Positions 3,393 through 63,782 of a stretch of DNA of 64,000 nt are shown here, piece after piece (position 1 is the first letter of the stretch; each line of letters opens with the position of its first letter). The notes under the pieces are model-generated. The model was given only the letters and a program-made list of their open reading frames with translations, did no database searches and had not been told where the DNA came from. The translations under genes and the position numbers were made by a program. The stretch spans positions 250,815 through 314,814 of the IMG/VR virus record IMGVR_UViG_3300046692_000091, one strand, 5' to 3'.

Positions 3393-3439
3393 TTCATGGC
3401 CTCACCTTCGGGTGGGGCTTATGTCCACAAGGAAACAAC

Positions 3440-3844
3440 ATGCGACATTTTCCACCTGATGTAATCCTGCATGTCGGTGACAAAGTAAACTTCATTGTCA
3501 ACGTGCAGATCAAACCAAATCTTGCTTTACCCTCAGAAGAACGTGACCATCACAATCATCTTACGGTAGGAAAGGCATACCCTGCGATAGTCGTCACTTC
3601 GAATTACTATAACACAGAAGTCGAACTGGTAAATGACTTGGGGGAAAATGCCATCCACTGGGCCGGATATGGTATTTGCCACGAAGGCATGAAAACCGTA
3701 ACATCACAAATGCCAGATGACATAATCCAAGCACGCAAGATTGTCTGGATTGATGGGATCGAAGAAAAGACCACCACCGAGTATAAACGCGTACTGGCTT
3801 CATTGCAAGAACAACGTGATCAAATCAACAAAGGTGAAATATGA
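3440..3844 (+). CDS. Hypothetical protein, SH3-like (HLTVGKAY..NDLG motif)
   Basis: AAGGA SD before ATG 3440; 134 aa; ATGA overlap with the next gene. Confidence 0.7.
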   Translation: MRHFPPDVILHVGDKVNFIVNVQIKPNLALPSEERDHHNHLTVGKAYPAIVVTSNYYNTEVELVNDLGENAIHWAGYGICHEGMKTVTSQMPDDIIQARKIVWIDGIEEKTTTEYKRVLASLQEQRDQINKGEI

Positions 3845-4245
3845 ACTATAACGTCATCTTTAAAGAAGGCGAGCCATGCAAGTGGCGTTGCATGGTAGAT
3901 AACGAATGCCGTGATAATGCAGAGGAGATCATATCTGCAAAGTGGTATGATGTTATCGTGGCAGCCACGCATGGTACCGCTATGACGCTCATGCTTACTA
4001 ATGAACATGGCAAAGAACAACTTGTCCCACATTACGCTTATGGCACCTGGGCGGACTGTTCTCAAATCGGTATCCTTAATCCAGAACTGGCTACTGAACG
4101 TATGCGCGCCTATGTTCAGAAACAAATTAACGAACAAAAAGCCCACCATCAAACTCGGATGAATAACCTGCGTCATGAGATGCGGACTATCAACATTAAA
4201 GGATTCGTAGATGAGCCAGCTGTACTTGTGGAAACTAACGCGTAA
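3841..4245 (+). CDS. Hypothetical protein, probable paralogue of 3440-3844
   Basis: 134 aa, coupled start; similar (G/A)K.Y..IV and L.N(D/E).G motifs. Confidence 0.7.
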   Translation: MNYNVIFKEGEPCKWRCMVDNECRDNAEEIISAKWYDVIVAATHGTAMTLMLTNEHGKEQLVPHYAYGTWADCSQIGILNPELATERMRAYVQKQINEQKAHHQTRMNNLRHEMRTINIKGFVDEPAVLVETNA

Positions 4246-4555
4246 AGGCGATGTAGATTACGATCAATTTCGTGGGATGGTTGTATGTGCATCATCAGAA
4301 GACCTAGCACTGCATCATATCGCTCGTGAAGGACGTTGGTCTACTGATACCGATAGATCCCTGGCTGATAAAGTTTCAGACATCTTAGAAGTAGGTCTCC
4401 CTACCTCGGTTGAAGAATACCTGGCTTACGAAATGAGTGGGTTCGATGAAACGGATGAAATGTTTCCCCGTGCACACTGGACAGTACAATGCATTGGTAT
4501 AGTGATGACCGGTATAACACCAGGAATAATTCTCTCCGACATGCGCCACGGATAA
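4211..4555 (+). CDS. Hypothetical phage protein
   Basis: 114 aa; YD.F.GMVVCA.SE..A resembles a common small phage protein family. Confidence 0.65.
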   Translation: MSQLYLWKLTRKGDVDYDQFRGMVVCASSEDLALHHIAREGRWSTDTDRSLADKVSDILEVGLPTSVEEYLAYEMSGFDETDEMFPRAHWTVQCIGIVMTGITPGIILSDMRHG

Positions 4556-4599
4556 CTAAAGAAATACCCATAACCCCCATTTAATGTAAGAGGTTTGTT

Positions 4600-5781: not shown

Positions 5782-5974
5782 TACTTACAGCCATCGCATT
5801 GGCCCAGGTAGTGGTTCAATGATCGCCTCGAAGGTATGGGGTAGCATTAAACGTGCACAAGTCGGTCACAAAGAACGTACGTTCTCTGAGTCGATGGATC
5901 GCGCTAGTACATTGCCAACTTCTGGGATCTTCCATCCGGAATATGAAGCGCATGATTGCTTGACGGTTTAACAG

Positions 5975-6007
5975 CATAAAGCCTTCCCCTAGGGGAAGGC
6001 GCTTATG
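5975..6007. terminator. Bidirectional hairpin between convergent genes (CATA...TATG type)
   Basis: Perfect 20-bp palindrome GCCTTCCCCTAGGGGAAGGC (5981-6000) flanked by CATAAA and GCTTATG. Confidence 0.7.
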
Positions 6008-7082
6008 TCAAGTCACGGATTAGGTCTTCTACATCTTTAACCAAACGTTGCATCATTGGCGATGAACCATTCATCTTAAGTGATTGCGAATGGATAGACT
6101 CACGGAGTTCATAAAGGATCTCGTTGGTCTGTGTCTTATCGTAACTGGGTGCTTGCTTTAAGCTATCTACTAGGTACTTGATGAATGGAACTCGCGCTAA
6201 TGCTAAGGCCCACTCGTTTTGCAGTGTCACAGGTCCCTTAGGGAGTTGTAGGACTTGATACAGAGAATCCTTAAGCAGCATAGGGGTCATCTGTGCAAGC
6301 TCTACCACCATGCCTGTACGCATTGTCCGTTGACTTAATGTATTCTTAGCCATGCCGTCTGTTACAGGGGTAAGGTCAGGAATATAGAAAGGATGCGGTA
6401 GTGGGTACTTGGTATTTGGCAACTTGTACGCCATGCGGGATAATCGGTTGAAATACGCAATCTCCAAATAGGATTCCAAGCAATTAACCAAAGCGTAGGA
6501 GCCAATGAATTTGTACATGTTAATCGCTTCGGGTTCAACTGTGCCGAAGTTGCTAAACACCCAGTGTCGATATTGAACCATCAGCATTGGAATGTTAATA
6601 AGCAGTACGCCATAGCCTTTACCCGGAGTACGGTTATTCATGATGGGTAAGTTGATATCACTACGAGAGTGATAAAGATAGCGTAAAGGTTTTAGATCCC
6701 TCCAACTAGCTTTCAAGTTAGTCGTAGGGAATCGTTCGATGGATGAGATCACCACTTCTTCACATTGTGGACCGAGTGTTGCTCCAGCCTCGAATATCTT
6801 TCCTCTATTAATAGCATCACATAGTCCAAGAGTTCGAGTCAGGCCTCTGGCTTGATCCTCTACCTTCTTGGCCCATGTGGCGTCATCACTCCGAAACTCC
6901 AATACGAAATGATTAATAATCATTGCGAGAAGATTTTTGCTGTCCACTATCTTAGGGAAACGCCGATAGTAGTTTGTTACGTCCTGGATCTGCTGCTTTA
7001 CTTGCCGCTGGATATAAGGACGTTTGGGATCATACGTGACCCCCTTGCTACCAATTGGGTCTTCTCTGAAGAGTGCGTACAT
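6003..7082 (-). CDS. Conserved virion/head protein (phiKZ gp52-like)
   Basis: 359 aa from MYALF; position just upstream of the chimallin block matches phiKZ-like synteny. Confidence 0.65.
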   Translation of the reverse strand: MYALFREDPIGSKGVTYDPKRPYIQRQVKQQIQDVTNYYRRFPKIVDSKNLLAMIINHFVLEFRSDDATWAKKVEDQARGLTRTLGLCDAINRGKIFEAGATLGPQCEEVVISSIERFPTTNLKASWRDLKPLRYLYHSRSDINLPIMNNRTPGKGYGVLLINIPMLMVQYRHWVFSNFGTVEPEAINMYKFIGSYALVNCLESYLEIAYFNRLSRMAYKLPNTKYPLPHPFYIPDLTPVTDGMAKNTLSQRTMRTGMVVELAQMTPMLLKDSLYQVLQLPKGPVTLQNEWALALARVPFIKYLVDSLKQAPSYDKTQTNEILYELRESIHSQSLKMNGSSPMMQRLVKDVEDLIRDLT

Positions 7083-8377: not shown

Positions 8378-8515
8378 GAGATTGCCGAAAGGTTCTCGAA
8401 TGGTTAAGTGTATGGCCCGCACTCTAGGCGAGTTCACTTAAGTGTGTTAATGTGTGCTTATTATATAGCAGACAAACTCGTCTGAAACCTTAGCGCTTAT
8501 TGCGCTGTAGTTATA
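8378..8515 (+). ncRNA. Candidate structured RNA between gp53-like gene and the chmA promoter
   Basis: Several nested stems seen by eye (GAAA-capped hairpin; TTAAGTG/CACTTAA; three-way junction); no ORF; family unknown. Confidence 0.35.
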
Positions 8516-8524
8516 GCCTGAATA

Positions 8525-8554
8525 GAAAAAATCTCAGATCTATATTACTACTTT
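8525..8554 (+). promoter_or_regulatory. Early promoter of chmA
   Basis: GAAAAAATCTCAGATCTATATTACTACTTT contains the phiKZ early consensus TATATTAC; exact 30-bp copy at 18750-18779. Confidence 0.8.
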
Positions 8555-8620
8555 GAATCTATCCAGCAATTGAATAGACTCTTCTTGATCAAGAAAACGA
8601 AATCGTAAAAGGAAAGCAAC

Positions 8621-10652: not shown

Positions 10653-10689
10653 TGGCTCCCTTCGGGGAGCCACTCTTATTTCTTTTTTG
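10653..10689 (+). terminator. Intrinsic terminator after chmA
   Basis: TGGCTCCC-TTCG-GGGAGCCA followed by CTCTTATTTCTTTTTTG. Confidence 0.8.
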
Positions 10690-13075: not shown

Positions 13076-13086
13076 ACAACATAATC

Positions 13087-13110
13087 GCCTATCCTTCGGG
13101 ATAGGCTTTT
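13087..13110 (+). terminator. Intrinsic terminator
   Basis: GCCTATCC-TTCG-GGATAGGC followed by TTTT. Confidence 0.75.
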
Positions 13111-14291: not shown

Positions 14292-14324
14292 GGGGACTTC
14301 GGTCCCCAACCCTTGTTTTTTCTT
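14292..14324 (+). terminator. Intrinsic terminator
   Basis: GGGGAC-TTCG-GTCCCC followed by a T-rich run; the identical 16-mer recurs at 36327-36342. Confidence 0.7.
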
Positions 14325-18694: not shown

Positions 18695-18749
18695 TAAAAG
18701 TATAAGGCGTCCTCATTAGAGGATGCTCTATGCCCCAACTGCGGGACTG

Positions 18750-18779
18750 GAAAAAATCTCAGATCTATATTACTACTTT
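18750..18779 (+). promoter_or_regulatory. Early promoter, exact copy of the chmA promoter
   Basis: 30-bp identity with 8525-8554; contains TATATTAC. Confidence 0.8.
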
Positions 18780-18801
18780 AGATATCTGAAGAGTAAAAAC
18801 G

Positions 18802-22243: not shown

Positions 22244-23651
22244 AGGTATCCTGAAGTCCATGCAATATGACGTGGACGAAACAGGACTGGTGAGTATCAT
22301 TACTCCCACAGGTACTAAGGCCGAAGCAACCGTAGGCGGCGCCCGTCTGGTAGTTCCAACTCAGAAGCGTCTGCGTGATGGCTTCACGGAAGACCTGCAA
22401 CCGTATCACCCATTGTGCGAGTCCATCTCGCGCCGTGGTACTTCCCCAGTACTGCAACACATGCAGCGTTCGGTAAAACAGCATCTGGGTTTCCTGGTGT
22501 CGTTCCTGGCCGATGCTTTGGTGAAGATGTCTCTGAATACCAGCATCCATAAAGACCTGCCACCCGACATGTCCGATGTGCTGATGAAGCTTACCGGTGT
22601 AACTGATAAGACTCAGTCGATCCTGGACAAGCTGATCCCTGCTGCACACAAACAGAATAAGCTGGTAACAGTTTATCTGAAAGGCGCTGGCACATTCCAA
22701 GGTCAGAAGGTTAATCGGATTGCTGTAATCCGTTTCCCGATCCTGGATGAGTTGGACAATGATTCTGATAAAGACATGGTCCTCGGTGTTAAGGTTCCAG
22801 CCAAGCAGCGTAAAGTGATCTCTGGTCTGCTGCGTCTGATCATTCCATTCGGTGATAGCCCTGAAGAATATTCGGCTGGTACCATCAGTCGTGTAGCTCC
22901 ATTCTTCACAGCGTTCCTGCAGGCGTATCACAAGATCGCAACCCGCATGAACCAATCGATCAATCGTTTCGCTGGTCCTCTGGCATTGCCTCTGAAACCA
23001 ATCGAACTGTTCCCACTGGAATGGATCGACCAGTTCCCAGCAATCTACAACCAGATCCCATCGTTGAATGGTAATGATGGCGGTACCGATGAAGTAGCTG
23101 AGGAAACTCAAGCAGCTCCACAAGTACAGCAACAGCGTCAATCACAGAACAATGTGGTTACTCCGACTCTGCAGAATACCATGCCGCAGATTGGTAGTCA
23201 CATCGCTAACCAGTTCAACTTCAACCAGCAGCCAGTGGTTCCACAGAACCAACGACCAGCAGCAGCTTCTGCACCACAGAACCAGAAGCCTAAGCAAACC
23301 GTAGCTGATCTGATGCGTGGTACTACTCCACAAATGCCTCAGATGCCGCAGTATGCTCCACCGCAACAAATGTATCAGCAACAACAGCAATACCCACAAC
23401 AGCAGATGGTTAACCAATATGGCCAGATCATCCAGCAGCAGATGCCTCAGATGCATGCAGGCGGTCAGGCTCAACTGCCATGGGTAATGCAACAGCAACA
23501 ACAGATGCAACCACAGAACCCGTACTTGCAAGTGTTCCAACAGCCTCAGATGCAACAGCAACAACCGCAGGTGATGCAGTACGGCCAATACCCACAACAA
23601 CAGATGTTCCAACAACCACAACAAGTCCAATACGGAAGTAACGGACTGTAA
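22218..23651 (+). CDS. Conserved nucleus-block protein with a long Gln/Pro-rich tail (phiKZ gp70-like)
   Basis: 477 aa; about the last 180 aa are Q/P/M-rich; overlaps the picA stop. Confidence 0.8.
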   Translation: MLSLSKVYEGILKSMQYDVDETGLVSIITPTGTKAEATVGGARLVVPTQKRLRDGFTEDLQPYHPLCESISRRGTSPVLQHMQRSVKQHLGFLVSFLADALVKMSLNTSIHKDLPPDMSDVLMKLTGVTDKTQSILDKLIPAAHKQNKLVTVYLKGAGTFQGQKVNRIAVIRFPILDELDNDSDKDMVLGVKVPAKQRKVISGLLRLIIPFGDSPEEYSAGTISRVAPFFTAFLQAYHKIATRMNQSINRFAGPLALPLKPIELFPLEWIDQFPAIYNQIPSLNGNDGGTDEVAEETQAAPQVQQQRQSQNNVVTPTLQNTMPQIGSHIANQFNFNQQPVVPQNQRPAAASAPQNQKPKQTVADLMRGTTPQMPQMPQYAPPQQMYQQQQQYPQQQMVNQYGQIIQQQMPQMHAGGQAQLPWVMQQQQQMQPQNPYLQVFQQPQMQQQQPQVMQYGQYPQQQMFQQPQQVQYGSNGL

Positions 23652-23680
23652 CGGCATATTGGGAGCCTTAGGGCTCCCAA
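23652..23680. terminator. Bidirectional hairpin between convergent genes
   Basis: CGGCATA then TTGGGAGCC-TTAG-GGCTCCCAA. Confidence 0.7.
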
Positions 23681-23683
23681 TTG

Positions 23684-24049
23684 CTATTTAAATTTTCTAC
23701 TCATATAGAGTCGAACGATGTTGTCAATCTGGTTTTGGTTAGGCCTGATCAACACTGGTCGAACCAATGGGTTACTCGGATCACGCATTTCTTTAGCGAA
23801 TTGATTCGGATTAGTCATTCCATTTATACGCAGATGAATGAAGTGGTATTCTGGAGGAATGCCCTTCTCCACTAGGTAACCGTAAAAATCACCTTCATAC
23901 TGATAGAAGAGATCCAATGGGATGTCCTCTACTGCTGCGGCCCGGTTGATTAGTAAGTTGAGATGCGTCTCTAACACCAATCGGAAATCCGAGTCGTAAT
24001 ATAATTCCGATCCCGGTTTAGCCATTTTGTTGAAAATCGTGAAGGCCAT
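23684..24049 (-). CDS. Small conserved protein
   Basis: 121 aa, divergent from the nvRNAP beta gene, ends at the hairpin. Confidence 0.75.
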   Translation of the reverse strand: MAFTIFNKMAKPGSELYYDSDFRLVLETHLNLLINRAAAVEDIPLDLFYQYEGDFYGYLVEKGIPPEYHFIHLRINGMTNPNQFAKEMRDPSNPLVRPVLIRPNQNQIDNIVRLYMSRKFK

Positions 24050-28242: not shown

Positions 28243-28258
28243 GCGGAGGACGAAGTTT

Positions 28259-28276
28259 GGAGGGCTTCGGCCCTCC
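28259..28276 (+). terminator. Hairpin after the nvRNAP genes
   Basis: GGAGGGC-TTCG-GCCCTCC; the T-run lies about 13 nt downstream. Confidence 0.5.
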
Positions 28277-28295
28277 ATTACTCGTTAATTTTTTT

Positions 28296-29822
28296 ATGGA
28301 ACCACTGATTACAGCCGAGAGGTATACCCATGGGGTACGCCTATCTGGTTATTCCAGGGAGACACTGTATAAACTACAGCGCTTCTTGGATACGTTACTG
28401 TTACGGGAACCAACTAAAGTCCAAGGCCGTATGGTCATGGTTACTAAGAAGAAGTACTATGGCATAACGGAAGACAACCGAAGCATCTTTATCCATCGAA
28501 ACTCTTACCCCGCTCTGGTTAAGCATCTAGCAAATGTACAAATCCCAGAAGAACGGATCAGGGTAATTGATATCGTGGTGCCTACTGCTGCACCGGCTAG
28601 GTTCGTGGTAAAAGAAAAGTTCTCAATGCGGGACTACCAGGAAACAATCCTGGAAGATATCTTGAGACCACATCTCCATTCGGCTCGGGTAGACCTGCAA
28701 ACGGGTAAAGGGAAAACGTACACAAGTCTGGAAGCTCAATCGTCTCTGGGGTGTCGTACCGTTATCATGGTTCCGCCTAAGTACTTCGGTATCTGGGAAG
28801 AAGCATTGAAAGACGTCTACGAAGATATTGACTTGCGTTACGTTCGTGTGAGTGGATCTGCAGAATTGCAAATGATGATCAACCGTGGCATCGAGAATGA
28901 CCTTGATGGTATCGATGTTATATTGATCTCTAACGTTACCTATCGTGCGTATATTGATACGTTCGAGCGCCTGGGTGACAAGATCGACACTGTTGGCTAT
29001 AATGCTCCTCCGCCTCGTTTCCACGAAGCGTTGAAAGTAGGCTTGCAGATCAACGACGAAATCCAAGAAGACCCAGGTCTGTTGTTCCGTACGGACATGT
29101 ACACCAACGTTGCAAAACAGATCTATCTGTCGGCTACTCCTTTCACGGGGAATGACTACGTTACAAAGATGATCGACTTGATGCTCCCTCCAGAGACATG
29201 CTGTCGGTTACCTAGTTACGATTCGTATATCAACGTGGTTGGTGTGCTGTACAGCGAGCCTGCAATTCAGTCTCGTGATTATCTGACTCCGTTTAAGAAC
29301 ACGTATAACCATGCGCGTTACGAAACGCAGATGATGAAATCGAAGAAACGTCTGGAAGCTTACAACCTGATGGTTTCTCGAATTCTCTATGGTCAGTATA
29401 TCTCGGATCGTATTCAGGAACAGAAAGCCCTAGTACTATGTGCTACGGTTGCTTTCATTGATCAACTTGTTAAGTACTTGAAGGTTAAGTATCCCGATAT
29501 ACAGATCAATGAACACGTAGCTGGTTCTCCTTACGCACGATTGATGTTGAACGATGTAACGGTATCGACTATTAAGTCATCCGGTACTGGTGTTGACATT
29601 CCTAACTTGCGTGAAGTGATCCTGTTACAAGCAACGGACTCGAAGAAGGATAACATCCAGATCCTAGGCCGCCTGCGTAAGTTGAAGCTGTTTGCTGACG
29701 TGGTCCCACGTATGACATACCTGGTGTGTCAACACATCCCACAACACGTCAAGTACCACAAGAACAAGGCTGACCACTTCGCTGGTAAGATCTTGAACAT
29801 GGTTCTCAGAAAAATTAGCTAG
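28296..29822 (+). CDS. Superfamily-2 helicase (XPB/UvsW-like; phiKZ gp75-like)
   Basis: MRDYQ (Q motif), LQTGKGKT (Walker A), INDEIQ (DExx), LSATP, GTGVDIPNL and QILGRLR. Confidence 0.9.
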   Translation: MEPLITAERYTHGVRLSGYSRETLYKLQRFLDTLLLREPTKVQGRMVMVTKKKYYGITEDNRSIFIHRNSYPALVKHLANVQIPEERIRVIDIVVPTAAPARFVVKEKFSMRDYQETILEDILRPHLHSARVDLQTGKGKTYTSLEAQSSLGCRTVIMVPPKYFGIWEEALKDVYEDIDLRYVRVSGSAELQMMINRGIENDLDGIDVILISNVTYRAYIDTFERLGDKIDTVGYNAPPPRFHEALKVGLQINDEIQEDPGLLFRTDMYTNVAKQIYLSATPFTGNDYVTKMIDLMLPPETCCRLPSYDSYINVVGVLYSEPAIQSRDYLTPFKNTYNHARYETQMMKSKKRLEAYNLMVSRILYGQYISDRIQEQKALVLCATVAFIDQLVKYLKVKYPDIQINEHVAGSPYARLMLNDVTVSTIKSSGTGVDIPNLREVILLQATDSKKDNIQILGRLRKLKLFADVVPRMTYLVCQHIPQHVKYHKNKADHFAGKILNMVLRKIS

Positions 29823-29842
29823 TCCTTCGGGGCTAGCTTTAT
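29817..29842 (+). terminator. Hairpin/terminator after the helicase
   Basis: AGCTAGTCC-TTCG-GGGCTAGCT then TTAT. Confidence 0.65.
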
Positions 29843-29859
29843 TCCGTCTAGAGGTTTAA

Positions 29860-30063
29860 ATGCAATACGCTTACTTCGCTTTTCTAATAGCTATCGTCAT
29901 AACGCTAGGTGCCGTCTGGTACCGTGATTGGAAGTATCCATTCATGCAGCGTACCCCACACTGGACAAAGTCCCTGTCGCACAAGATCGCTAAGATTGCA
30001 TTCTGTGTAGCCTTGGTGTTTATGGCTACCTTCCTTTATATGTACTTCAAGGAAATGATTTAA
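29860..30063 (+). CDS. Small membrane protein (2 predicted TM helices)
   Basis: 67 aa, GAGG SD, two hydrophobic stretches separated by a basic loop. Confidence 0.75.
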   Translation: MQYAYFAFLIAIVITLGAVWYRDWKYPFMQRTPHWTKSLSHKIAKIAFCVALVFMATFLYMYFKEMI

Positions 30064-30073
30064 ATAATCTAAA

Positions 30074-30102
30074 GGACTATATTACAATCGTGAATATAGT
30101 CC
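30074..30102 (+). promoter_or_regulatory. Early promoter TATATTAC embedded in an inverted repeat
   Basis: GGACTATATTAC-AATC-GTGAATATAGTCC. Confidence 0.65.
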
Positions 30103-30120
30103 AACATAAGGAGCTCCATC

Positions 30121-30324: not shown

Positions 30325-30333
30325 GGAACAATA

Positions 30334-30573: not shown

Positions 30574-30575
30574 TC

Positions 30576-31029: not shown

Positions 31030-31253
31030 TGCTTTTGAATATGGCTACATTTGTATTGATGCTGATGTTTTGTCTAACTCTGCCTGGTGGGGTCTGGTTA
31101 GTCTATCGTCGTGAGTATGAACCTGAATTCATAACACGGCATCGTAAACTACTATTGTGGATTCTCTCCACAGTGACTATCCTTACGGTGGTATCAACAG
31201 GGATCTGTATGTATGAGATCTCTTTGATTCAGGAACGCTTACTTTTACCATAA
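31011..31253 (+). CDS. Small membrane protein (2 TM)
   Basis: 74-80 aa (alternative coupled start TAATG at 31029); ends at the hairpin. Confidence 0.75.
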   Translation: MLSGDVMLLNMATFVLMLMFCLTLPGGVWLVYRREYEPEFITRHRKLLLWILSTVTILTVVSTGICMYEISLIQERLLLP

Positions 31254-31290
31254 CGGCATAAAGCCTCCACCTTCGGGTGGAGGCAATATG
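31254..31290. terminator. Bidirectional hairpin (CGGCATA...AATATG type)
   Basis: GCCTCCACC-TTCG-GGTGGAGGC (31263-31284) between convergent genes. Confidence 0.75.
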
Positions 31291-31301
31291 TTATTTTTTT
31301 T

Positions 31302-31769: not shown

Positions 31770-31792
31770 CTGTGGGTCTTTGTTCTTATGAC

Positions 31793-33436: not shown

Positions 33437-33441
33437 TGGTA

Positions 33442-34099: not shown

Positions 34100-34126
34100 C
34101 TAAAATCAAAGGAAGAGGGCTTTTTA

Positions 34127-36320: not shown

Positions 36321-36326
36321 ATAAAA

Positions 36327-36346
36327 GGGGACTTCGGTCCCCTATG
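36327..36346 (+). terminator. Hairpin directly followed by TATG
   Basis: GGGGAC-TTCG-GTCCCC-TATG. Confidence 0.6.
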
Positions 36347-36375
36347 CTCTGATCTATAATCGATGAGGCTTTACA

Positions 36376-37713
36376 ATGAGCAAGAACATCAAGCGGCAAG
36401 CATTTCAAACTCAACCACTAGTGAAACCAGCCATGCCCTTACCAGTAACAGAACATGTCGATCCAACCACTCTCCCAACTGTTGATACCAGTGCAGTTGC
36501 AGATATAATGGAACAAGCACTGCCGGAACTTACTTCCGAGGAAACCAAATATGAAACTACCGAAGCGGCGCCAGGGGGTGATGACTCACTCGCAGTGGAA
36601 CAAACCGATAGTGGAAGCAGTGAAACGCCGGCGGAGCCAGAGTTCGACTACGCTGGGTTCCGACTCTCCCATGGAATCCCTGATACTTGGACAGATGAAC
36701 ACATCGACGGATGGATCGTCGCAGGTGGAAATGTCGTAGAGCATACCGAACGTGGTAGTATCGTAGTCGACGTTACTCGTAAAGAACGCGAGATCTCTAC
36801 TTGGGGCGTTGATGAAATCCTCGATGCCTTCGAAGGTAAACTGAATGGCGTAGACGAAGGTCAATACGGTGCACTGGCAAAAGCTTATCGCCAACTGGCT
36901 CCAGTAGATGCAGCTTGGTCTGTTCGTGATCTTATCGACTTCCTCACCCAAGGTCTGGAACCATCGAAGACTACTAACGGTGCTTGGAAACAAGACGTTA
37001 CTCGTGCACGTCGCCCTGCTCAAGATTGGACTACCCAAGAACTGGTAGCCTGGGCACTCGGTGAGATCCGTGCAGTTGGTGAAGCTACGGATCAGAAGAT
37101 CGCTATCGAGATGAACAAGCGTCTGGATCTGTGTTCCCAATCGAACAAGCCAGAAGATATCATCCGTACTTACCGGAAAATGCAGAGCAATTCTGTGAAG
37201 GTCGTGGGTGTACAACCTACTGCACCTACCCCACAGGCTACGCTTCCAGAAGCAGAGCCACAAACAGAAACACCAATCCCACAAGGGCTGAATGCAATGA
37301 ATGTAGCATACCTGAAAACACAAACTGAACGTTACCTGAAAGCCTGTGCACCTAACACCCCGATTACTCCTGAGATCGGTGCTACTGAACAACGTCAACT
37401 GGACAACCTGTTCCGCTATATCCTGAAACTGGATGACCCAGCTGGATTCTGTGGAGCAATGGGTTACTTCCGTGACTTCTATGCCAAGCATCGTGATGGT
37501 TTGTTTGAACCGACCTACGCTAGTCGTTACACTGGTTCGCTCCGTACCGAAGGCGACCTGCAAGAAACACACATCAATCTGCTGGCTATTTTCCACGTCT
37601 ATACCGACTTGAACAAAGCTGCACGCAAACAGATCGATCTCCCATTCCTACTGCGTAAGTTTCCATCTGATCGTCAAGCCTGGCTGCTGGAATTCTTCCA
37701 ACGGTATTGCTAA
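36376..37713 (+). CDS. Conserved hypothetical protein with Trp-containing helical repeats (phiKZ gp81 position)
   Basis: 445 aa, GAGG SD; four W(T/S/G)xx(E/D)(I/L) units. Confidence 0.8.
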   Translation: MSKNIKRQAFQTQPLVKPAMPLPVTEHVDPTTLPTVDTSAVADIMEQALPELTSEETKYETTEAAPGGDDSLAVEQTDSGSSETPAEPEFDYAGFRLSHGIPDTWTDEHIDGWIVAGGNVVEHTERGSIVVDVTRKEREISTWGVDEILDAFEGKLNGVDEGQYGALAKAYRQLAPVDAAWSVRDLIDFLTQGLEPSKTTNGAWKQDVTRARRPAQDWTTQELVAWALGEIRAVGEATDQKIAIEMNKRLDLCSQSNKPEDIIRTYRKMQSNSVKVVGVQPTAPTPQATLPEAEPQTETPIPQGLNAMNVAYLKTQTERYLKACAPNTPITPEIGATEQRQLDNLFRYILKLDDPAGFCGAMGYFRDFYAKHRDGLFEPTYASRYTGSLRTEGDLQETHINLLAIFHVYTDLNKAARKQIDLPFLLRKFPSDRQAWLLEFFQRYC

Positions 37714-37748
37714 CATAAGTGCCTGCCTTTGGGGCAGGCTTTATGCCG
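37714..37748 (+). terminator. CATAA-hairpin-TTTATGCCG element
   Basis: GCCTGCC...GGCAGGC stem at 37721-37739. Confidence 0.65.
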
Positions 37749-37783
37749 TTATCTTTTGTATATGAATAATAAATGAGGCAGAT

Positions 37784-39022
37784 ATGTTCGAACTTCTCTT
37801 ATCAACGATGTACCTTATCGAAGAAGAGGATGACCACACTTTACCATTTCCCGAAGGGACTCCATATAAAGGAGTGGTGCAGTCAAAGAATTTCATTAAT
37901 GGTACATCCTTAGCATCTCGATTAGATTTGATTGAAGGTATGCCTATTAATAATGACTGTGGTTGGCTTCACTTCGTTGAGGATAATGGATACAACATTT
38001 ATATCGCTAAGAAACCACTGCGATATAATGTCACATGGAATGGAATCAATGCTGCACAAACAGGTAAAGAACTTACCATTGACGGTAAGACATTCGTGGT
38101 TGAATTCATGTCTGGCATGAAAACCAATGGGTTAAGTGCTGTCCCTGCTAACGCTGGTGGTGCCTGGAACAGATACATTTACAATCTTTACGCCGGTGAG
38201 CGTGCAGCTGAATTACCTGTCTCTCGATTGAACTGGGGATCATACACCGAAACAATGTTAGGTGTTCCTCTAGAGTCTTTAGGAAGTGTTCCCAGGGCAT
38301 CCTTTAGCTTGGTTAAAGAATCTGTAGCACAGGGTGGTTATGCTACCCGTGGTGTCAGTTATGTTAACGCGAGTGTCCCTAACGTGATGGGTGTTTGGTA
38401 TGGTATTCCGACTGATCCAGGTGAGCATTACGCATGGCGTCCAATGCTGGTAGAAAAGGGAACTGTTCCCCCTGCACCAGTGACACCATTCAAAGGTGAA
38501 ATCACTCAGGCTGACTTCATCACGTTCGATGCATTGGCTACAGCGGTAGGCATCACAACGGGTAACCCACTCAATATAACAGCCCCATGGTTGAAGATTG
38601 TTGAGAACGGTAAAACGTTCTATTGGCCTAAAGCTTCTATTCGTGGCAGTGTATTACGTGAAACACTTAATGATAGTAATTTGGTAACTGGTGATACAAC
38701 AACAGTTATTGGCGGACTCACTTACAAGGTGCGTCTGATTACCGGTCGAGCTACATCAGAATCTGGTGACATCGGCGGTGAGTGGTTGGATTGGATGACT
38801 AACCTAACTAATGGAGAATGGGCATTCTATACTCCAGCAGATTTCGTTACAGGTACAGGTGGTACTGGTAACGGCGAACTTGTCTTGGTACAAGAACTGC
38901 ATGCTAATGGTAGTTGGGCAACTAACGGCTATCCTAACTTGTTAGACTCTGGTTGGTATCAAGCAGCTAACGCTACCCATGATGGTTATGGCTGGCGTCC
39001 AGTATTGGAACTCGTTCCATAA
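37784..39022 (+). CDS. Probable virion structural protein with two tandem copies of a WRP-ending domain
   Basis: 412 aa; TP(Y/F)KG...GG(A/E)W...WRP(M/V)L occurs twice; late TATG and GAGG SD upstream. Confidence 0.7.
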   Translation: MFELLLSTMYLIEEEDDHTLPFPEGTPYKGVVQSKNFINGTSLASRLDLIEGMPINNDCGWLHFVEDNGYNIYIAKKPLRYNVTWNGINAAQTGKELTIDGKTFVVEFMSGMKTNGLSAVPANAGGAWNRYIYNLYAGERAAELPVSRLNWGSYTETMLGVPLESLGSVPRASFSLVKESVAQGGYATRGVSYVNASVPNVMGVWYGIPTDPGEHYAWRPMLVEKGTVPPAPVTPFKGEITQADFITFDALATAVGITTGNPLNITAPWLKIVENGKTFYWPKASIRGSVLRETLNDSNLVTGDTTTVIGGLTYKVRLITGRATSESGDIGGEWLDWMTNLTNGEWAFYTPADFVTGTGGTGNGELVLVQELHANGSWATNGYPNLLDSGWYQAANATHDGYGWRPVLELVP

Positions 39023-39058
39023 CGGCATAAACGGCTTCCCTGAGGGGAAGCCAATATG
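39023..39058. terminator. Bidirectional hairpin (CGGCATA...AATATG type)
   Basis: GGCTTCCC-TGAG-GGGAAGCC; nearly identical to 45069-45104. Confidence 0.75.
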
Positions 39059-39063
39059 TTGTC

Positions 39064-41654: not shown

Positions 41655-41757
41655 TAGATACTCCTTGAATATGGGTTGAACACGTAGGATTAGGAACGCG
41701 AGTATTTCCTCCAAAGCCTTATCTTTATGATTAATCAACCACCCATGGAAGCGCACC

Positions 41758-42993: not shown

Positions 42994-43004
42994 GGTAAAA
43001 GACA

Positions 43005-43747: not shown

Positions 43748-45068
43748 GACTGGCCAACCCGCCACCTTTAAGGATATCTTTGCTGAAGCCACTGATGGCC
43801 TGCAGCAGATTGCACCAACCACTACCCCTGATGAGGAAGTCTCTTCTGATCTGTTAGAAGATCCTATCGATTACCCAATCGAGAATCAGGCTGAGATGGT
43901 TACACTGATCGAAGAGCCTGCCCCAATGACAACAGACGTTATTGATGGCAACCTCCAACCAGAACTAGCGATCGCTGTAGAAGCGATTAATGATCTGCTG
44001 GATCTGCATAGCACTATTAAAGTACACGGTGTTAGTTCTCATGACATGGCTGGTCTGGTGACTATTCAGAAGCGCATGATCGACAACAACATCGCTTTAC
44101 CTAAAGCATCCTTAGAAGAGTTCACTGGTTACTTTACTCCTGAACGCTCTCTGCTAAACCAAAAGGTCAGCTTGGAGAACATCGGTAAGGTTATCCTGGA
44201 CACTATCAAGGCTTGGCTGAAGAAACTGATTGACCTGGTCATGTCTGGTTATCGTTGGGTTAAAGGTCTGAAGCAGAAACACGCTGTGCTAGATGCGCAA
44301 CTGGTTAAAGCTCGTGACGTACTGATGAATGTACGTAAGATCTACATCAAGATGAAAACTCTGAATGGTGTACTGGGTAGCGAAGCAGCTAAAACAATGG
44401 CCGAGCTATCGGATACCATGTTACTGACTTCCTCATTGGAACGTAACCGTGTAACACTGTATGGTTTCTCTGATGACGCAGCTCTTAAGCAAGTGAAAGG
44501 CTTGTTCGAAGAAGCTCGTACCACCAGTAAAGCAGTTGCTGCTAAGATCACACAACTCGGTTCATTGATGGGTAACCAAGAGACTCCATCGGAAGATGAT
44601 CTGAATACGTTGCATGATGTTGCTCTGGTATTGAGCGGCACTGAAGAAATGCTAGCTATCTCTGATGATCCTAATTATCTCCTGACTAACCTCGGTAGTG
44701 ACTTCTGGGATAAAGTAGAGAAGTTCCGTAGTGCCCAGATTATCGACTTCGATGACATGGTTAAACATTACGGTTCTGCTGCTGATGCACTGGCTCGTAT
44801 TCGTTCGATCAAAATCGAAGACCCACAACAAGCAGAATTTGCTCAGTCGGTTATCGATTCTATCACGACTGCGGTTGGTCGGTTGAATACTATCATTAGT
44901 TTCTTCAACACAGCTGCCCAGTCACAAGTACGTGCCGCCAAGACTTATCGCGAGTACTACTCTAGCGCTATCGAGATCTTGCTGTTGGACTTCAAATCTA
45001 AGTCTCCTTCATCGGATTCTGTAAAAGAGATGAAGAAGATGATTGCTGAACTGCAATTGTTGAAATGA
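43731..45068 (+). CDS. Protease-processed head protein, inner-head paralogue family (phiKZ gp86 position)
   Basis: Acidic propeptide, AVE/SLE sites, VSLENIGKVILDTIKAWLKKL amphipathic helix. Confidence 0.75.
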   Translation: MDQELETGQPATFKDIFAEATDGLQQIAPTTTPDEEVSSDLLEDPIDYPIENQAEMVTLIEEPAPMTTDVIDGNLQPELAIAVEAINDLLDLHSTIKVHGVSSHDMAGLVTIQKRMIDNNIALPKASLEEFTGYFTPERSLLNQKVSLENIGKVILDTIKAWLKKLIDLVMSGYRWVKGLKQKHAVLDAQLVKARDVLMNVRKIYIKMKTLNGVLGSEAAKTMAELSDTMLLTSSLERNRVTLYGFSDDAALKQVKGLFEEARTTSKAVAAKITQLGSLMGNQETPSEDDLNTLHDVALVLSGTEEMLAISDDPNYLLTNLGSDFWDKVEKFRSAQIIDFDDMVKHYGSAADALARIRSIKIEDPQQAEFAQSVIDSITTAVGRLNTIISFFNTAAQSQVRAAKTYREYYSSAIEILLLDFKSKSPSSDSVKEMKKMIAELQLLK

Positions 45069-45104
45069 CATAAACGGCTTCCCCTAGGGGAAGCCAATAT
45101 GCCG
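45069..45104. terminator. Bidirectional hairpin (CATAAAC...AATATGCCG type)
   Basis: Perfect palindrome GGCTTCCCCTAGGGGAAGCC (45076-45095) between convergent genes. Confidence 0.75.
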
Positions 45105-45106
45105 TG

Positions 45107-51832: not shown

Positions 51833-51841
51833 GAGTCAACA

Positions 51842-55429: not shown

Positions 55430-55486
55430 TACTTGATCGGGGCTTGTCCCCGATCTTATGTATCTTTTAACCTGAGGAAACCTGCC

Positions 55487-58624: not shown

Positions 58625-58648
58625 GGGAGCCTTCGGGCTCCCTTTATT
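58625..58648 (+). terminator. Intrinsic terminator
   Basis: GGGAGCC-TTCG-GGCTCCC then TTTATT. Confidence 0.7.
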
Positions 58649-58711
58649 TCGATCTGTCCAATGCTATGTTAATTGCAATTAGCACAGAATAAATTCCTTG
58701 AGGAACAAAAC

Positions 58712-60229: not shown

Positions 60230-60274
60230 AACAATGGACGGGGCCTAGTGCCTCGTCTTATGTTAGGAGGTCCT

Positions 60275-61438: not shown

Positions 61439-61538
61439 TTTTACGCAATCTTGTGAAACGACGTTTCGTCCAAAATTGTCGGGCTGTGCCAAAGGACGAA
61501 CGGCATAGCCACAAATCAATCCTGTACAGGTAGAGAAC

Positions 61539-63743
61539 ATGAATATTCTGAATTATCTAACTCCTTCATTCGAGGAGTTTGTTGATGCACCAGTCGGTGT
61601 TGATCAACTGGCCCACAACTCTGCTGCCACTCCTGGCACCGCAGAAGTTCCAGGTGTTGCACCCGTAGCCGATACCCAAACTGATTCGCTGGAAATTCCT
61701 GAATCCGTAGGTCCTGCTCTGGTAGCAAGTTCTGATGAAGTACAAGCTGCTACTATCGTAGAAGACCCAGGTCATTCCGAAGCAGAAGCTGCTGCAAACC
61801 AAGTATCCGATGCTGATGCCTCTGTAATTGAACAAGCACAAGTTGCTCCTGCTGAAACCGGTTCGGCTGATGCCGGGGCCGTAACTACTGATGAAGGTAC
61901 TGGCGATGTTTCCGAATCTACCGAATTGGGTGGCGATGACACTGGCGCTGCTGACAGCGTTGGTAGTGACACTGGCGACGCTGATCTGGGCACTGATGCT
62001 GGTGACCTCGGCGATACTTCTGGTGATGCTGGATCGGATGATCTTGGCGATCTGGGCGGTACCGACGAAGGTACGGCGGAAGTCGGTGGTGATGCAGAAC
62101 TGGGTAGCGAAGGTGAAGCGGACGCTGGCAGTGAAGCAGATCTAGGCGACGCTGCTGCCGAAACTGGCGACGTAGGTGAGACTGGTGATGTTGGTGAAAC
62201 CACTGACGATACCACAACCGAAGAAGATGGTCTGGGCGATGCTGGGACTGAAGAAGGTGGCGAAGATGGTCTGGGGGACGGAGCTGAAGGTGATACCGAA
62301 ACCGGTGAAGCCGAAGGCGAAGAAGAAACCGAAGAAGCGGGCGAAGCCGAAGGCGAAGAAGCCGGTAGCGAGTTCGAAGAAAGCACCGACGAGTCCGAAA
62401 CTGGCGGTGACGAAGAAGAAACCACTGAAGAAGCCGAAAGCGAAGAAGCTGATGCCTCCGAAGAAAGTGGTACTGAAGCCGATAGTGATGAAGATGACGG
62501 GGTGGAAATCGATATCCCCGACGTAGATACTGAAACTACCGAAGATGATGCTGAAGAAGCCGAAGAAGAAGCTGCTGAGAAAGTAGCTGAAGACGAAGAG
62601 CTCGATGACGAAATTATCGACACTTCTAAATCCGTTGATGAACTGGATGAAGACACTGTTGCAGTCGAAGAATTCATCGGTGTTCTGCAACACGGTATTC
62701 GTACTAAGCGTTTCTCCGCGCAGACCGTAGCCTTGGCCCAGTCACAGCTGATGAAGCTCTCGAAGAAGTGGGATAGTGAAGCTCCGTGCATTCCTTCTAT
62801 GGAAGACTACTCGGAGAAGAACCTCGACGCTTACTACACTAACTCGTTGGAATCTTTCTCTGGCTTCCTGAAGAAGATCAAACACGTTCGTGATAAGTTC
62901 CTCGATCAGTTCGCCGCAAAGATGAACGACAAGATCCACCTGAAAGCAGTTGAGACTCAAGTCGCTGCAATCAACAAAGCTCTGGATGTTCAGATTCTGC
63001 GTGTTAAAGAACTGAAGCTGGAAGAAGCGGTTAGTGTTAAGATCCCTGCAGTTCTGCGTGGTGAAGGTGGTCCAGTGAAATCTGTTACCGCTGAACTACA
63101 ATGGCTGGGTGATGTAGCTAGTATCTTCGGTCATGACAAGACTTTCTTGGAAGGCATCTCGAAACTGATCAACCAAGCTGTTAAAGAAGGTGATGCACTT
63201 AAGTCCACTGCCACTCTGAACAAAGCACTGAAGCTGGCTCTGCCATCTAAGTCTTACCCAGCTTCGATCTATCAAGGTTCTAAGTTGGCTTCGTTTAGCT
63301 TCGAGAAAGTAGACCGTAAAGCTTCTGGCTCGATGGTTGAAGACATGAAGACTCTGGCTGATCGCGCTATTCCTGAATCGAAACAATTCGATGTAGGTAT
63401 GGGTAAAGGTCCAGACACAGCAATGTTGAAGAAAACCGATCTGGTTAAAATGCTTCAGCTGGCTAAAGTTCTGATCGGTCTGTCTCGTGGTACAGCTGCT
63501 GCCGCTGGTAAAGGCATCGTTGAATCCATCGGTGTTGTTAACGCATCGAAGTCTGAACTGAACCAGAAAGATGATAAAGCAGGTGATGGAGAAACTCGTC
63601 GTAGTAACGATGCAGCTATGAATCAACTGGTGCATCAGTTCTGGGTTGCCCTCTACAACTCTACCGAGAACTACTCTGGTTTCCAATGGCACGTTATTCT
63701 GCTTGCAGATAACCTGGTCAATCTGGTACAGAAAGTCAAGTAA
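61539..63743 (+). CDS. Inner-body/ejection protein with very long acidic propeptide (phiKZ gp97-like)
   Basis: 734 aa; about 370 aa E/D/G/A-rich region, then AVEE, SMED and SLESF sites. Confidence 0.8.
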   Translation: MNILNYLTPSFEEFVDAPVGVDQLAHNSAATPGTAEVPGVAPVADTQTDSLEIPESVGPALVASSDEVQAATIVEDPGHSEAEAAANQVSDADASVIEQAQVAPAETGSADAGAVTTDEGTGDVSESTELGGDDTGAADSVGSDTGDADLGTDAGDLGDTSGDAGSDDLGDLGGTDEGTAEVGGDAELGSEGEADAGSEADLGDAAAETGDVGETGDVGETTDDTTTEEDGLGDAGTEEGGEDGLGDGAEGDTETGEAEGEEETEEAGEAEGEEAGSEFEESTDESETGGDEEETTEEAESEEADASEESGTEADSDEDDGVEIDIPDVDTETTEDDAEEAEEEAAEKVAEDEELDDEIIDTSKSVDELDEDTVAVEEFIGVLQHGIRTKRFSAQTVALAQSQLMKLSKKWDSEAPCIPSMEDYSEKNLDAYYTNSLESFSGFLKKIKHVRDKFLDQFAAKMNDKIHLKAVETQVAAINKALDVQILRVKELKLEEAVSVKIPAVLRGEGGPVKSVTAELQWLGDVASIFGHDKTFLEGISKLINQAVKEGDALKSTATLNKALKLALPSKSYPASIYQGSKLASFSFEKVDRKASGSMVEDMKTLADRAIPESKQFDVGMGKGPDTAMLKKTDLVKMLQLAKVLIGLSRGTAAAAGKGIVESIGVVNASKSELNQKDDKAGDGETRRSNDAAMNQLVHQFWVALYNSTENYSGFQWHVILLADNLVNLVQKVK
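61900..62650 (+). repeat. Low-complexity acidic repeats (ETGDVG x2, EDGLGD x2, EEAEGE-type units)
   Basis: Imperfect short tandem repeats at both DNA and protein level. Confidence 0.7.
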
Positions 63744-63746
63744 CAA

Positions 63747-63782
63747 CATAGACGCCTTCCCTTCGGGGAAGGCTTTATGCCG
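63747..63782 (+). terminator. CATA-hairpin-TTTATGCCG element
   Basis: GCCTTCCC-TTCG-GGGAAGGC at 63754-63773. Confidence 0.7.

What the first reader, a model, noticed from the sequence alone, without database searches (positions are those of the whole stretch)
3395..63782. Family of intergenic hairpins flanked by CATA...TATG instead of a U-tract
At least ten GC-rich hairpins (3399, 5981, 18707, 31263, 36327, 37721, 39033, 45076, 55435, 60237, 63754) are followed within 0-3 nt by TATG (often TATGCCG or TATGTT). Many are preceded by its reverse complement, (CGG)CATA. The copies at 39026-39058 and 45069-45101 are nearly identical. Hairpins after early or replication genes (385, 10653, 13087, 14292) instead carry ordinary T-runs. 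TATG is the known phiKZ nvRNAP late-promoter core. These may be terminator-plus-late-promoter cassettes, nvRNAP-specific terminators, or RNA processing stems. Between convergent genes the TATGs point antisense into both neighbours.
Basis: partly seen in the sequence, partly recalled or inferred. Interest (0 to 1): 0.65.

Follow-up and report, generated by a model that had tools for sequence, protein, structure and literature searches.

The report
phiKZ-type transcription terminators in a jumbo phage
The hairpins flanked by CATA...TATG are real and far too frequent for chance, but they are this uncultivated Pseudomonas jumbo phage's copies of the conserved terminator already mapped by RNA sequencing in phiKZ and 201phi2-1, and the TATG beside them is not a mapped transcription start in phiKZ.

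Summary
The window is the last 64 kb of a 314.8-kb Psa21/D6-like, phiKZ-type jumbo phage from a rhizosphere metagenome.

Genome-wide, 48 of 99 GC-rich hairpins are followed by TATG, against a background of 4-6%. 49 are preceded by CATA, and 32 have both.

The full motif is (ACGR)CATAA-N-[GC stem, mostly UUCG loop]-NT-TATG-YYGT. It matches the published phiKZ terminator consensus BCCYCCCCHWWDGGGRRGGBYTTATKYYGT.

- A covariance model built only from this genome finds 77-96 strand hits each in Psa21, D6, phiKZ, 201phi2-1 and PA1C. It finds 24 in Xanthomonas phage LucasX and none in EL or RSF1.
- All eight experimentally validated 201phi2-1 terminators carry the motif. Their mapped 3' ends lie 1-2 nt after the G of TATG.
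- The UNCG loops read on the sense strand 35 times against 1, so the element acts as RNA.
- In phiKZ, none of 57 late and 62 other mapped transcription starts lies within 3 nt of any of 70 hairpin-adjacent TATGs.

So the terminator reading is supported. The reading of a general terminator-plus-late-promoter cassette is not, and neither is nvRNAP specificity. CATA is mostly the same signal on the opposite strand, giving bidirectional terminators.

Ordinary; low novelty.

The parts
3395..3427 (+). TATG-type terminator hairpin after the nucleotidyltransferase homologue (2592-3392). TATG is at 3420-3423, there is no upstream CATA, and the tail is TATGTCCA. The next start codon is 17 nt after the G.
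   Evidence: (-17.4 kcal/mol, z -3.8)
5972..6011 (.). Bidirectional terminator between convergent genes: CATA 5975-5978, stem 5981-6000 with CTAG loop, TATG 6004-6007. The model scores higher on the minus strand.
   Evidence: (48.5 bits minus, 34.5 plus)
13077..13110 (.). Hairpin after 12467-13075. The sense tail is TTTT, and the upstream CATAA gives TTATG on the minus strand.
18700..18736 (+). TATG-type terminator (TATG 18729-18732) after 17945-18694, followed 30 nt later by an early-promoter-like motif.
23651..23696 (.). Hairpin between convergent genes. The minus strand reads stem + ATATGCCGT and the plus strand tail is TGCTATTTAAATTTT. The stem shows a compensatory change in D6.
31253..31294 (.). 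Bidirectional terminator between convergent genes: CATA 31257-31260, stem 31263-31284, TATG 31287-31290.
   Evidence: -24.2 kcal/mol
36326..36346 (+). Hairpin directly abutting TATG (36343-36346) after the virion RNA polymerase beta piece. No upstream arm and no YYGT. The next start codon is 30 nt after the G.
37712..37749 (+). Full-motif terminator: CATA 37714-37717, stem 37721-37739, TATGCCGT 37742-37749. A second TATG lies 19 nt downstream.
39022..39062 (.). Bidirectional terminator between convergent genes: CATA 39026-39029, TATG 39055-39058.
45065..45105 (.). Bidirectional terminator between convergent genes. It is nearly identical to 39022-39062, with a palindromic CTAG loop.
   Evidence: (53 bits)
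55435..55460 (+). Hairpin + T + TATG after 54269-55429. It is identical in Psa21 and D6, has no upstream arm and no YYGT. The next start codon is 27 nt after the G.
60236..60262 (+). Hairpin with two G-U pairs, abutted by TATG (60259-62). It lies 13 nt before the start codon of the next gene, with AGGAGG in between.
63743..63783 (+). Full-motif terminator after the 734-aa virion structural gene: CATA 63747-50, TATGCCGA 63776-83. A second TATG lies 11 nt downstream.
   Evidence: (49.5 bits)
385..411 (+). T-tail terminator-like hairpin.
10653..10688 (+). T-tail hairpin (CTCTTATTTCTTTTTT). It is the first hairpin after the early-promoter-like motif at 8509-8560.
14292..14321 (+). T-tail hairpin.
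29817..29847 (+). Hairpin + TTTATTCCGT at the end of the helicase gene. This is the T variant (K = T) of the same motif.
58625..58651 (+). Hairpin + TTTATTTCG after a head protein gene. It is conserved in Psa21 and D6.
28258..28295 (+). Hairpin after the non-virion RNA polymerase beta' gene with a different tail (TTACTCGTTAATTTTTTT). The stem covaries in Psa21. It is probably related, but that is not shown.
8509..8560 (+). Early (vRNAP) promoter-like motif ...AAAAATCTCAGATCTATATTACTAC... This is context, not part of the hairpin family.
   Evidence: same motif as the phiKZ early promoters
18734..18785 (+). Early promoter-like motif just downstream of the 18707 terminator.
30046..30097 (+). Early promoter-like motif (ATTTAAA..TAAAGGACTATATTAC).

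Best explanation
These are the phage's own transcription terminators, members of the conserved terminator family of phiKZ-like jumbo phages. As the RNA polymerase leaves a gene, the transcript folds into a GC-rich hairpin. The median distance from the stop codon to the stem is about 10 nt, and the loop is mostly an extra-stable UUCG tetraloop. The hairpin is followed by a short U-rich stretch (N-U-UAU) and then G-Y-Y-G-U. Judged from relatives, the transcript ends 4-8 nt after the stem, within or just after UAUG. The upstream CATAA(YCGT) arm is the same signal written on the other strand. Elements with both arms are therefore two-way terminators. They are the rule between convergent genes and also occur at about 40% of co-directional junctions. 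In the free RNA the two arms can pair and lengthen the stem, which has been reported to strengthen termination in 201phi2-1. What is shown here is the motif, its enrichment, its position after stop codons, maintenance of the stem, the strand bias of the loop, and identity with the experimentally mapped elements of relatives. Inferred, not shown: that termination occurs in this uncultivated phage, and why G-YY-G-T is conserved. My inference is that it acts at the DNA or active-site level as a pause signal. In 201phi2-1 the mapped ends sit on a pyrimidine followed by G. That resembles the Y(-1)G(+1) elemental pause consensus of multisubunit polymerases, which I cite from memory and have not tested.
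For: Enrichment: (48/99 and 49/99 against 3-6%). Motif columns: (T,A,T invariant in 82-83 rows, G in 77, then Y 80, Y 79, G 57, T 65 of about 83). Published consensus and 61 mapped phiKZ terminators: PMC10914365. 201phi2-1 terminator motifs A and B, and the in vivo trap assay: PMC11512511. All eight validated 201phi2-1 terminators have stem + TTTATG(Y)[Y]GT, with the end 1-2 nt after G. Thirty phiKZ 3' ends lie 4-8 nt after such stems. The model from this genome alone hits 80 times in phiKZ, 77 in 201phi2-1, 85 in Psa21, 83 in D6 and 96 in PA1C. These hits include the validated 201phi2-1 sites at 132376-132427, 84712-84764, 179508-179560 and 289791-289842. Stem: 98.6% of cells paired, with 148 two-sided changes against 42 in shuffles. 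Orthologous junctions in Psa21 and D6 keep the arms but change the stems. UNCG loops read on the sense strand 35 times against 1, p = 1e-9. The stop-to-stem distance is mostly 3-18 nt.
Against: There is no RNA data for this phage: only DNA metagenome runs hold it. Termination here is therefore inferred by homology. Nanopore 3' ends cannot by themselves separate termination from processing. In two-way elements one strand reads AAUAUG after the stem, a poor U-tract for a classical intrinsic terminator, although such a site (201phi2-1 289834) is a mapped end. The model alignment is fitted to the stem, which inflates the pairing percentage. E-values from the short calibration are rough.
Confidence: 0.85

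Rival explanations
1. Terminator plus late-promoter cassette: the TATG right after the hairpin is also a non-virion RNA polymerase start site (G = +1) that restarts transcription for the next gene.
For: TATG with G = +1 is the necessary core of phiKZ late promoters (PMC4666361). At several co-directional late-gene junctions here (3399, 36327, 55435, 60237) the hairpin-adjacent TATG is the only TATG before the next gene, and it lies 13-30 nt from the start codon, a plausible leader length. Copies lacking YYRY after TATG sit closer to the next start (median 28 against 57 nt, p = 0.01). In phiKZ two late starts (P049, P075) use a second TATG within about 10 nt of a terminator stem; P049 lies 6 nt past the terminator's own TATG.
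Against: In phiKZ, 0 of 57 late and 0 of 62 other mapped starts lie within 3 nt of any of 70 hairpin-adjacent TATGs. This excludes use of 5% or more of them at p = 0.03. The model late promoter p119L has no hairpin upstream. 14 of 18 convergent junctions have TATG on both strands pointing into the 3' end of a gene. At least 7 copies are followed by a separate early promoter. The conserved YYGT has no counterpart in late promoters, which show no conservation after TATG. The short-distance trend is equally explained by the ribosome-binding site displacing YYGT.
Confidence: 0.1
2. [quoted passage not shown] This pauses the enzyme 5-8 nt after the hairpin and so replaces a long U-tract. T-tail hairpins serve the virion polymerase on early units.
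For: [quoted passage not shown] The geometry fits, since the G lies 6 nt after the stem and the ends lie 4-8 nt after it. Conservation extends past the mapped 3' end, so part of the signal cannot act in the released RNA. T-tails are enriched in early units (odds ratio 4.1, p = 0.04). In the phiKZ stretch I read, early units mostly end at T or other tails.
Against: 8 of 24 early-promoter units here end at a TATG-type hairpin. Late units in phiKZ end at both types. The 201phi2-1 copies terminate host RNA polymerase in uninfected cells as well as or better than lambda T0, so no phage-specific reader is required. There is no direct evidence of pausing.
Confidence: 0.15
3. RNA processing or stability stems: the 3' ends arise by exonuclease trimming back to a protective hairpin, or by endonuclease cutting in UAUG, not by termination.
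For: Nanopore 3' ends do not distinguish the two. The hairpins are very stable.
Against: Eight elements placed between two reporters lowered downstream expression in uninfected cells, which is termination or at least polarity. Trimming would not select a DNA word that extends beyond the 3' end.
Confidence: 0.08
4. DNA-level palindromes: binding sites for a dimeric protein, cruciforms, or REP/MITE-like mobile repeats.
For: The element is palindromic. Five near-identical copies of about 45 nt lie at unrelated convergent junctions, with no homology between the flanking proteins.
Against: The loop is strongly strand-biased (UNCG on the sense strand 35 against 1), which a DNA-symmetric function would not produce. 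Many copies have one arm only. The distances of the two arms from the loop are no more often equal than independence predicts (8 of 32 observed, about 8 expected). The elements sit at orthologous junctions in Psa21 and D6 rather than at variable sites. No target-site duplications were seen.
Confidence: 0.03

Closest known systems
Conserved intrinsic terminator motif of phage phiKZ (Putzeys et al. 2024, Microlife; PMC10914365)
   Same: The anatomy and consensus are the same: BCCYCCCC-HWWD-GGGRRGGB followed by YTTATKYYGT. The abundance is also similar (61 mapped in phiKZ; about 60-70 loci here). A model built from this genome alone finds 80 strand hits in phiKZ.
   Different: This phage is uncultivated and has no transcript data. 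The genome GC content is 46% against 37%. The published consensus does not include the upstream CATAA arm.
Terminator motifs A and B of phage 201phi2-1 (PMC11512511)
   Same: All eight validated terminators carry stem + TTTATG-YY-GT, several with an upstream (A)CATA arm. The authors report that co-occurring motifs lengthen the hairpin and strengthen termination.
   Different: I could not see their logos, so equating motif B with the CATAA arm is an inference. Here the arms look like largely independent strand-specific signals: there is no coupling of their distances from the loop, and the association of an antisense arm with a sense TATG is only weak (16 of 30 against 9 of 34).
Bacterial intrinsic (factor-independent) terminators, including bidirectional ones between convergent genes
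   Same: A GC-rich hairpin followed by a U-rich tail, with the 3' end 4-8 nt after the stem. They function with host polymerase in a reporter trap. Complementary A/U-rich flanks give two-way activity.
   Different: The U-run is short and interrupted (UUUAU) and is followed by a conserved G-YY-G-U that classical terminators lack. On one strand of two-way copies the tail begins AA.
phiKZ non-virion RNA polymerase late promoter (TATG, G = +1; PMC4666361, PMC12809450)
   Same: The same four-letter word.
   Different: Late promoters have no hairpin upstream and no conserved bases after TATG. Mapped phiKZ late starts do not coincide with hairpin-adjacent TATGs.

Membership tests
phiKZ-type conserved terminator | GC-rich stem-loop matching BCCYCCCC-HWWD-GGGRRGGB | tested here: met
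   The consensus here is G-S-C-T-N-C-CC / YTCG / GG-G-N-A-G-S-C. 98.6% of cells are paired.
phiKZ-type conserved terminator | Stem followed by YTTATKYYGT | tested here: met
   Column counts in 84 model hits: T 58, T 83, A 82, T 83, G 77 (T 5), Y 80, Y 79, G 57, T 65. K = T variants lie at 29817 and 58625.
phiKZ-type conserved terminator | Lies just downstream of stop codons or between convergent genes | tested here: met
   84 of 99 hairpins are intergenic. The stop-to-stem distance is mostly 3-18 nt. There are 18 convergent junctions.
phiKZ-type conserved terminator | Recognised across genomes by one model, including experimentally validated copies | tested here: met
   Four validated 201phi2-1 sites are among the listed hits, and all eight show the motif by eye.
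phiKZ-type conserved terminator | RNA 3' ends map to the element in infected cells | not testable with these tools
   No RNA run holds this phage. This is shown only for phiKZ and 201phi2-1.
phiKZ-type conserved terminator | Host genome is a phiKZ-like phage with its own multisubunit RNA polymerases | tested here: met
   The nvRNAP beta' protein is 93% identical to Psa21, 73% to PA1C and 65% to phiKZ-like phages. The region is syntenic with Psa21 and D6. There are about 30 copies of a phiKZ-type early promoter motif.
nvRNAP late promoter | TATG word present | tested here: met
nvRNAP late promoter | Transcripts start at the G of that TATG | tested here: not met
   Tested on phiKZ data only: 0 of 119 mapped starts lie within 3 nt of 70 hairpin-adjacent TATGs. 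It is not testable for this phage itself.
nvRNAP late promoter | A gene to be transcribed lies downstream in the same direction | tested here: not met
   This fails at convergent junctions (14 of 18 have TATG on both strands) and for the antisense arm at 25 of 64 co-directional junctions. It is met at the co-directional sense copies.
Classical intrinsic terminator | GC-rich hairpin followed by a run of about 7-8 mostly U residues | tested here: inconclusive
   The hairpin is present. The tail is UUUAUGYY, with 4 U in the first 5 and then G/C. A simple T-run scan flags only some copies. ARNold called 52 of 132 201phi2-1 terminators intrinsic; for phiKZ the paper says more than 70% of 84 predicted intrinsic terminators are its own, 61 sharing the motif.
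REP/MITE-like mobile palindrome | Copies at non-orthologous, variable sites with terminal repeats or target duplications | tested here: not met
   The elements sit at orthologous junctions in Psa21 and D6. The loop is strand-biased. No duplications were seen. Five near-identical copies do exist.

The most novel reading that the evidence does not exclude
The TATG-YYGT tail is not just a weak U-tract. It may be a DNA-level pause or release signal for the phage's non-canonical RNA polymerases. On this reading, the same non-template TATG word that fixes the start site at late promoters (or a Y-G elemental-pause site two bases later) holds the enzyme 6-8 nt past the hairpin. One four-letter word would then serve initiation in an AT-rich, unstructured context and termination behind a GC hairpin. 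A minority of copies close to the next gene (3399, 36327, 55435, 60237) might do both.
Probability: 0.15. Interest if true: 0.6.

Novelty: new member of a known kind. Interest (0 to 1): 0.25.

Why it matters
The finding gives a ready terminator and operon map for an uncultivated Psa21-like jumbo phage. It also shows that the phiKZ terminator word is shared across at least five lineages: Phikzvirus, Serwervirus, Tepukevirus, phiPA3-like phages and, more thinly, a Xanthomonas jumbo phage. It is absent from EL and RSF1. Beyond annotation, one question stays open: why an intrinsic terminator carries a conserved G-YY-G-T that reaches past the RNA 3' end and shares TATG with the late promoter. That question can be tested with enzymes and templates that already exist. 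As it stands, the finding re-discovers a published motif.

Tried and rejected
- Rfam gave no family and ARAGORN no tRNA in the window.
- RNAalifold on a plain MAFFT alignment of 44 copies predicted no structure, because the loops were out of register. I replaced it with a loop-centred seed and a covariance model.
- The search of sequencing runs found five metagenome runs (kind guessed as DNA) and no RNA.
- Ceyssens et al. 2014 is not held. The PMC versions of both ONT papers hold no supplements. The bioRxiv version supplied phiKZ Tables S3 and S4. I read parts 7, 8 and 14 only, so starts P001-P007 and P127-P149 and most 3' ends were not used.
- I looked for gene duplication as the cause of the near-identical copies. 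The flanking proteins share no similarity.
- I tested whether the two arms are held at equal distance from the loop, as a paired outer helix would need. They are equal in 8 of 32 cases, as expected by chance.
- I tested whether TATG against T tails separates late from early units cleanly. It does not; there is only a trend.
- My own gene calls are crude: a codon-bias greedy caller plus gap filling. Context classes may be wrong for a few sites.
- The large protein searches, structure prediction and complex prediction were not needed.


Full report
**What the window is.** The 64-kb window is the right end (250,815-314,814) of a single 314,814-bp IMG/VR virus record with 46% GC. Nucleotide matches are to Pseudomonas syringae jumbo phages Psa21 and D6, at 81-83% identity. 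Gene order is syntenic with both, and includes pieces of the non-virion and virion RNA polymerases and a long block of virion structural genes. The nvRNAP beta' protein is 93% identical to Psa21, 73% to PA1C and 65% to the phiKZ group. The only sequencing runs that hold the DNA are metagenomes, the full holder being a rhizosphere sample. No RNA run exists. This is therefore an uncultivated phiKZ-type phage, and all statements about transcripts rest on relatives.

**Checking the observation.**
- Every listed hairpin is present and is followed within 0-3 nt by TATG.
- The hairpins fold at -13 to -24 kcal/mol, 3.5-6.5 standard deviations below shuffles.
- Six of the eleven also have CATA upstream.
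- I scanned the whole genome for perfect GC-rich stem-loops without reference to flanks and found 99. Of these, 48 have TATG at the 3' stem end, against a background of 4.3-6.4%. 49 have CATA at the 5' end, against 3.0-4.5%. 32 have both. Chance is excluded.
- Aligned on the loop, TATG begins 12 nt (range 11-13) from the loop centre.
- The tail normally reads UUUAUG, so a short U-run is present.

**What it is.** The literature already describes this element.
- Putzeys et al. (PMC10914365) mapped phiKZ 3' ends by ONT-cappable-seq. They report a conserved terminator, BCCYCCCCHWWDGGGRRGGBYTTATKYYGT, at 61 sites.
- The 201phi2-1 study (PMC11512511) found a very similar motif A at 59 terminators and a motif B that lengthens the hairpin. 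It showed eight terminators to work in a two-reporter trap in uninfected P. chlororaphis.
- I built a covariance model from 27 loop-centred copies of this genome only. At E <= 0.01 it gives 85, 83, 80, 77 and 96 strand hits in Psa21, D6, phiKZ, 201phi2-1 and PA1C. It gives 24 in Xanthomonas phage LucasX, 5 in SA002, 3 in RAY, and none in EL or RSF1. In the genome itself it gives 118 strand hits at E <= 1.
- Four of the eight validated 201phi2-1 terminators are among the listed top hits.
- I fetched all eight. Each shows stem + (T)TTATG-Y-Y-G-T, with the published 3' end 1-2 nt after the G.
- Thirty phiKZ 3' ends that I placed on the genome lie 4-8 nt after such stems, for both TATG and TATT tails.

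**Evidence that it acts as RNA on the sense strand.**
- In 84 model hits the eight stem pairs are formed in 98.6% of cells. There are 148 two-sided changes against 42 in shuffles, and pairing falls to 45-59% when the partner is slid by one to three columns. The alignment is model-fitted, which flatters this number.
- Orthologous junctions in Psa21 and D6 keep the arms while the stems differ or covary.
- At co-directional junctions the four-base loop reads UNCG on the sense strand 35 times and its complement once (p = 1e-9). A symmetric DNA function would not give this bias. The result fits the cUUCGg tetraloop, which is known to be unusually stable (my own knowledge).
- The stems begin mostly 3-18 nt after the stop codon.

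**What the CATA arm is.**
- At 18 convergent junctions, 14 have TATG on both strands and 3 have it on the minus strand only.
- At 64 co-directional junctions the sense strand has TATG in 30, a T-rich tail in 14 and another tail in 20.
- An antisense TATG (the CATA arm) is present in 25 of these 64. It is only weakly associated with a sense TATG (16 of 30 against 9 of 34).
- The two arms sit at equal distance from the loop in 8 of 32 cases, which is what independence predicts.
- I therefore read the arm chiefly as the same terminator signal on the opposite strand. In the free RNA it can also pair with the tail, which fits the reported stronger termination of two-motif elements.

**Is the TATG a late promoter?** TATG with G = +1 is indeed the necessary core of phiKZ late promoters, and it is read in the non-template strand by gp123. 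Four lines argue against a general cassette.
- The phiKZ start-site table lists 57 late and 62 other starts for P008-P126 (bioRxiv 10.1101/2023.10.13.562163, supplement). None lies within 3 nt of any of the 70 hairpin-adjacent TATGs in that range. This excludes use of 5% or more of them at p = 0.03 and of 10% or more at p = 0.0006. A few starts lie 6-58 nt further downstream at a second TATG.
- The model promoter p119L has no hairpin.
- Convergent copies have no gene to serve.
- In this genome a strongly conserved motif, ATTTAAA-N-TTTAAA-N-CTATATTAC, occurs about 30 times some 35-46 nt before gene starts. It matches the validated phiKZ early promoters. At least 7 TATG-type terminators are followed by it within 110 nt.

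One residue of doubt remains. Copies without YYRY after TATG sit closer to the next start codon (median 28 against 57 nt, p = 0.01), with no other promoter-like word in between. In the window these are 3399, 36327, 55435 and 60237. Crowding by the ribosome-binding site explains this as well as a dual role does.

**Is it specific to one polymerase?** T-rich tails are enriched among the first hairpins after early promoters: 7 T against 8 TATG, compared with 7 against 33 elsewhere (odds ratio 4.1, p = 0.04). But early units also end at TATG-type hairpins, phiKZ late units end at both types, and host polymerase terminates at the 201phi2-1 copies. Specificity for the non-virion polymerase is not supported.

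**Mechanism and what remains unexplained.** The best reading is ordinary hairpin-driven termination with a short U-rich hybrid. It does not explain why G-YY-G-T is conserved, when the last bases lie beyond the mapped 3' end and cannot act in the released RNA. In 201phi2-1 the ends fall on a pyrimidine followed by G. That recalls the Y(-1)G(+1) elemental pause consensus of multisubunit polymerases, which I cite from memory and have not tested. Alternatively, the promoter-reading pocket might hold the enzyme at TATG. Both are inferences, and nanopore ends are only good to about 2 nt.

**Verdict.**
- Novelty is low, because this is a new genome carrying a published element.

Noticed in passing
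window 8509-8560, 18734-18785, 30046-30097; about 30 sites genome-wide: There is a strongly conserved promoter-like motif in two sub-variants: (G)ATTTAAA-N4-TTTAAA-N3-CTATATTACTAC and AAAAATCTCAGATCTATATTACTAC. It lies 35-46 nt before gene starts and matches the validated phiKZ early (virion polymerase) promoters.
   Followed up: partly
genome 25262, 38161, 97618, 195338, 220620 (loci L004, L007, L012, L014): Five near-identical two-way terminators of about 45 nt (CATAAT-GGCTACCC-TTCG-GGGTAGCC-GCTATGCCTTATTTTT) lie at unrelated convergent junctions. The flanking proteins share no similarity. The same stem allele occurs in D6 at the orthologue of window 31263, where this phage has a different stem. 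This suggests copying between terminators or strong convergence.
   Followed up: partly
window 51826-51915 (5' end of the virion structural gene 51842-53185), L001 34940-35029, L002 36916-37005: About 85 nt, from the ribosome-binding site through an in-gene hairpin (TCGACGGG-gtagaa-CCCGTCGA, directly followed by an in-frame TATG), are identical in this phage, Psa21 and D6 apart from one inserted base before the start codon in this phage. This includes synonymous sites, in genomes that are otherwise 81-83% identical. It may be a nucleic-acid signal inside the coding start.
   Followed up: partly
whole genome: TATG occurs 1087 times on the plus strand and its complement CATA 736 times. Base composition predicts about 1417 for each. 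The promoter word is thus under-represented, more so in antisense to the mostly plus-strand genes.
   Followed up: no
window 28000-47000: Sigma-70-like promoter matches are fewer than in shuffles (18 against 31.7 +/- 5.4). This is consistent with a phage that does not use host RNA polymerase.
   Followed up: no
window 5989-5992, 45084-45087; genome 77571-77574: The self-complementary loop CTAG, which reads the same on both strands, occurs at 3 of 18 convergent junctions. It is not seen among the four-base loops of co-directional junctions, where UUCG dominates.
   Followed up: no
window 60236-60275: phiKZ has its strong late promoter p119L, with no hairpin, upstream of gp119. By gene order and size alone (not tested), the junction at 60236-60275 may be its counterpart. 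This phage and Psa21 have there a hairpin abutted by TATG, 13 nt before the start codon.
   Followed up: partly
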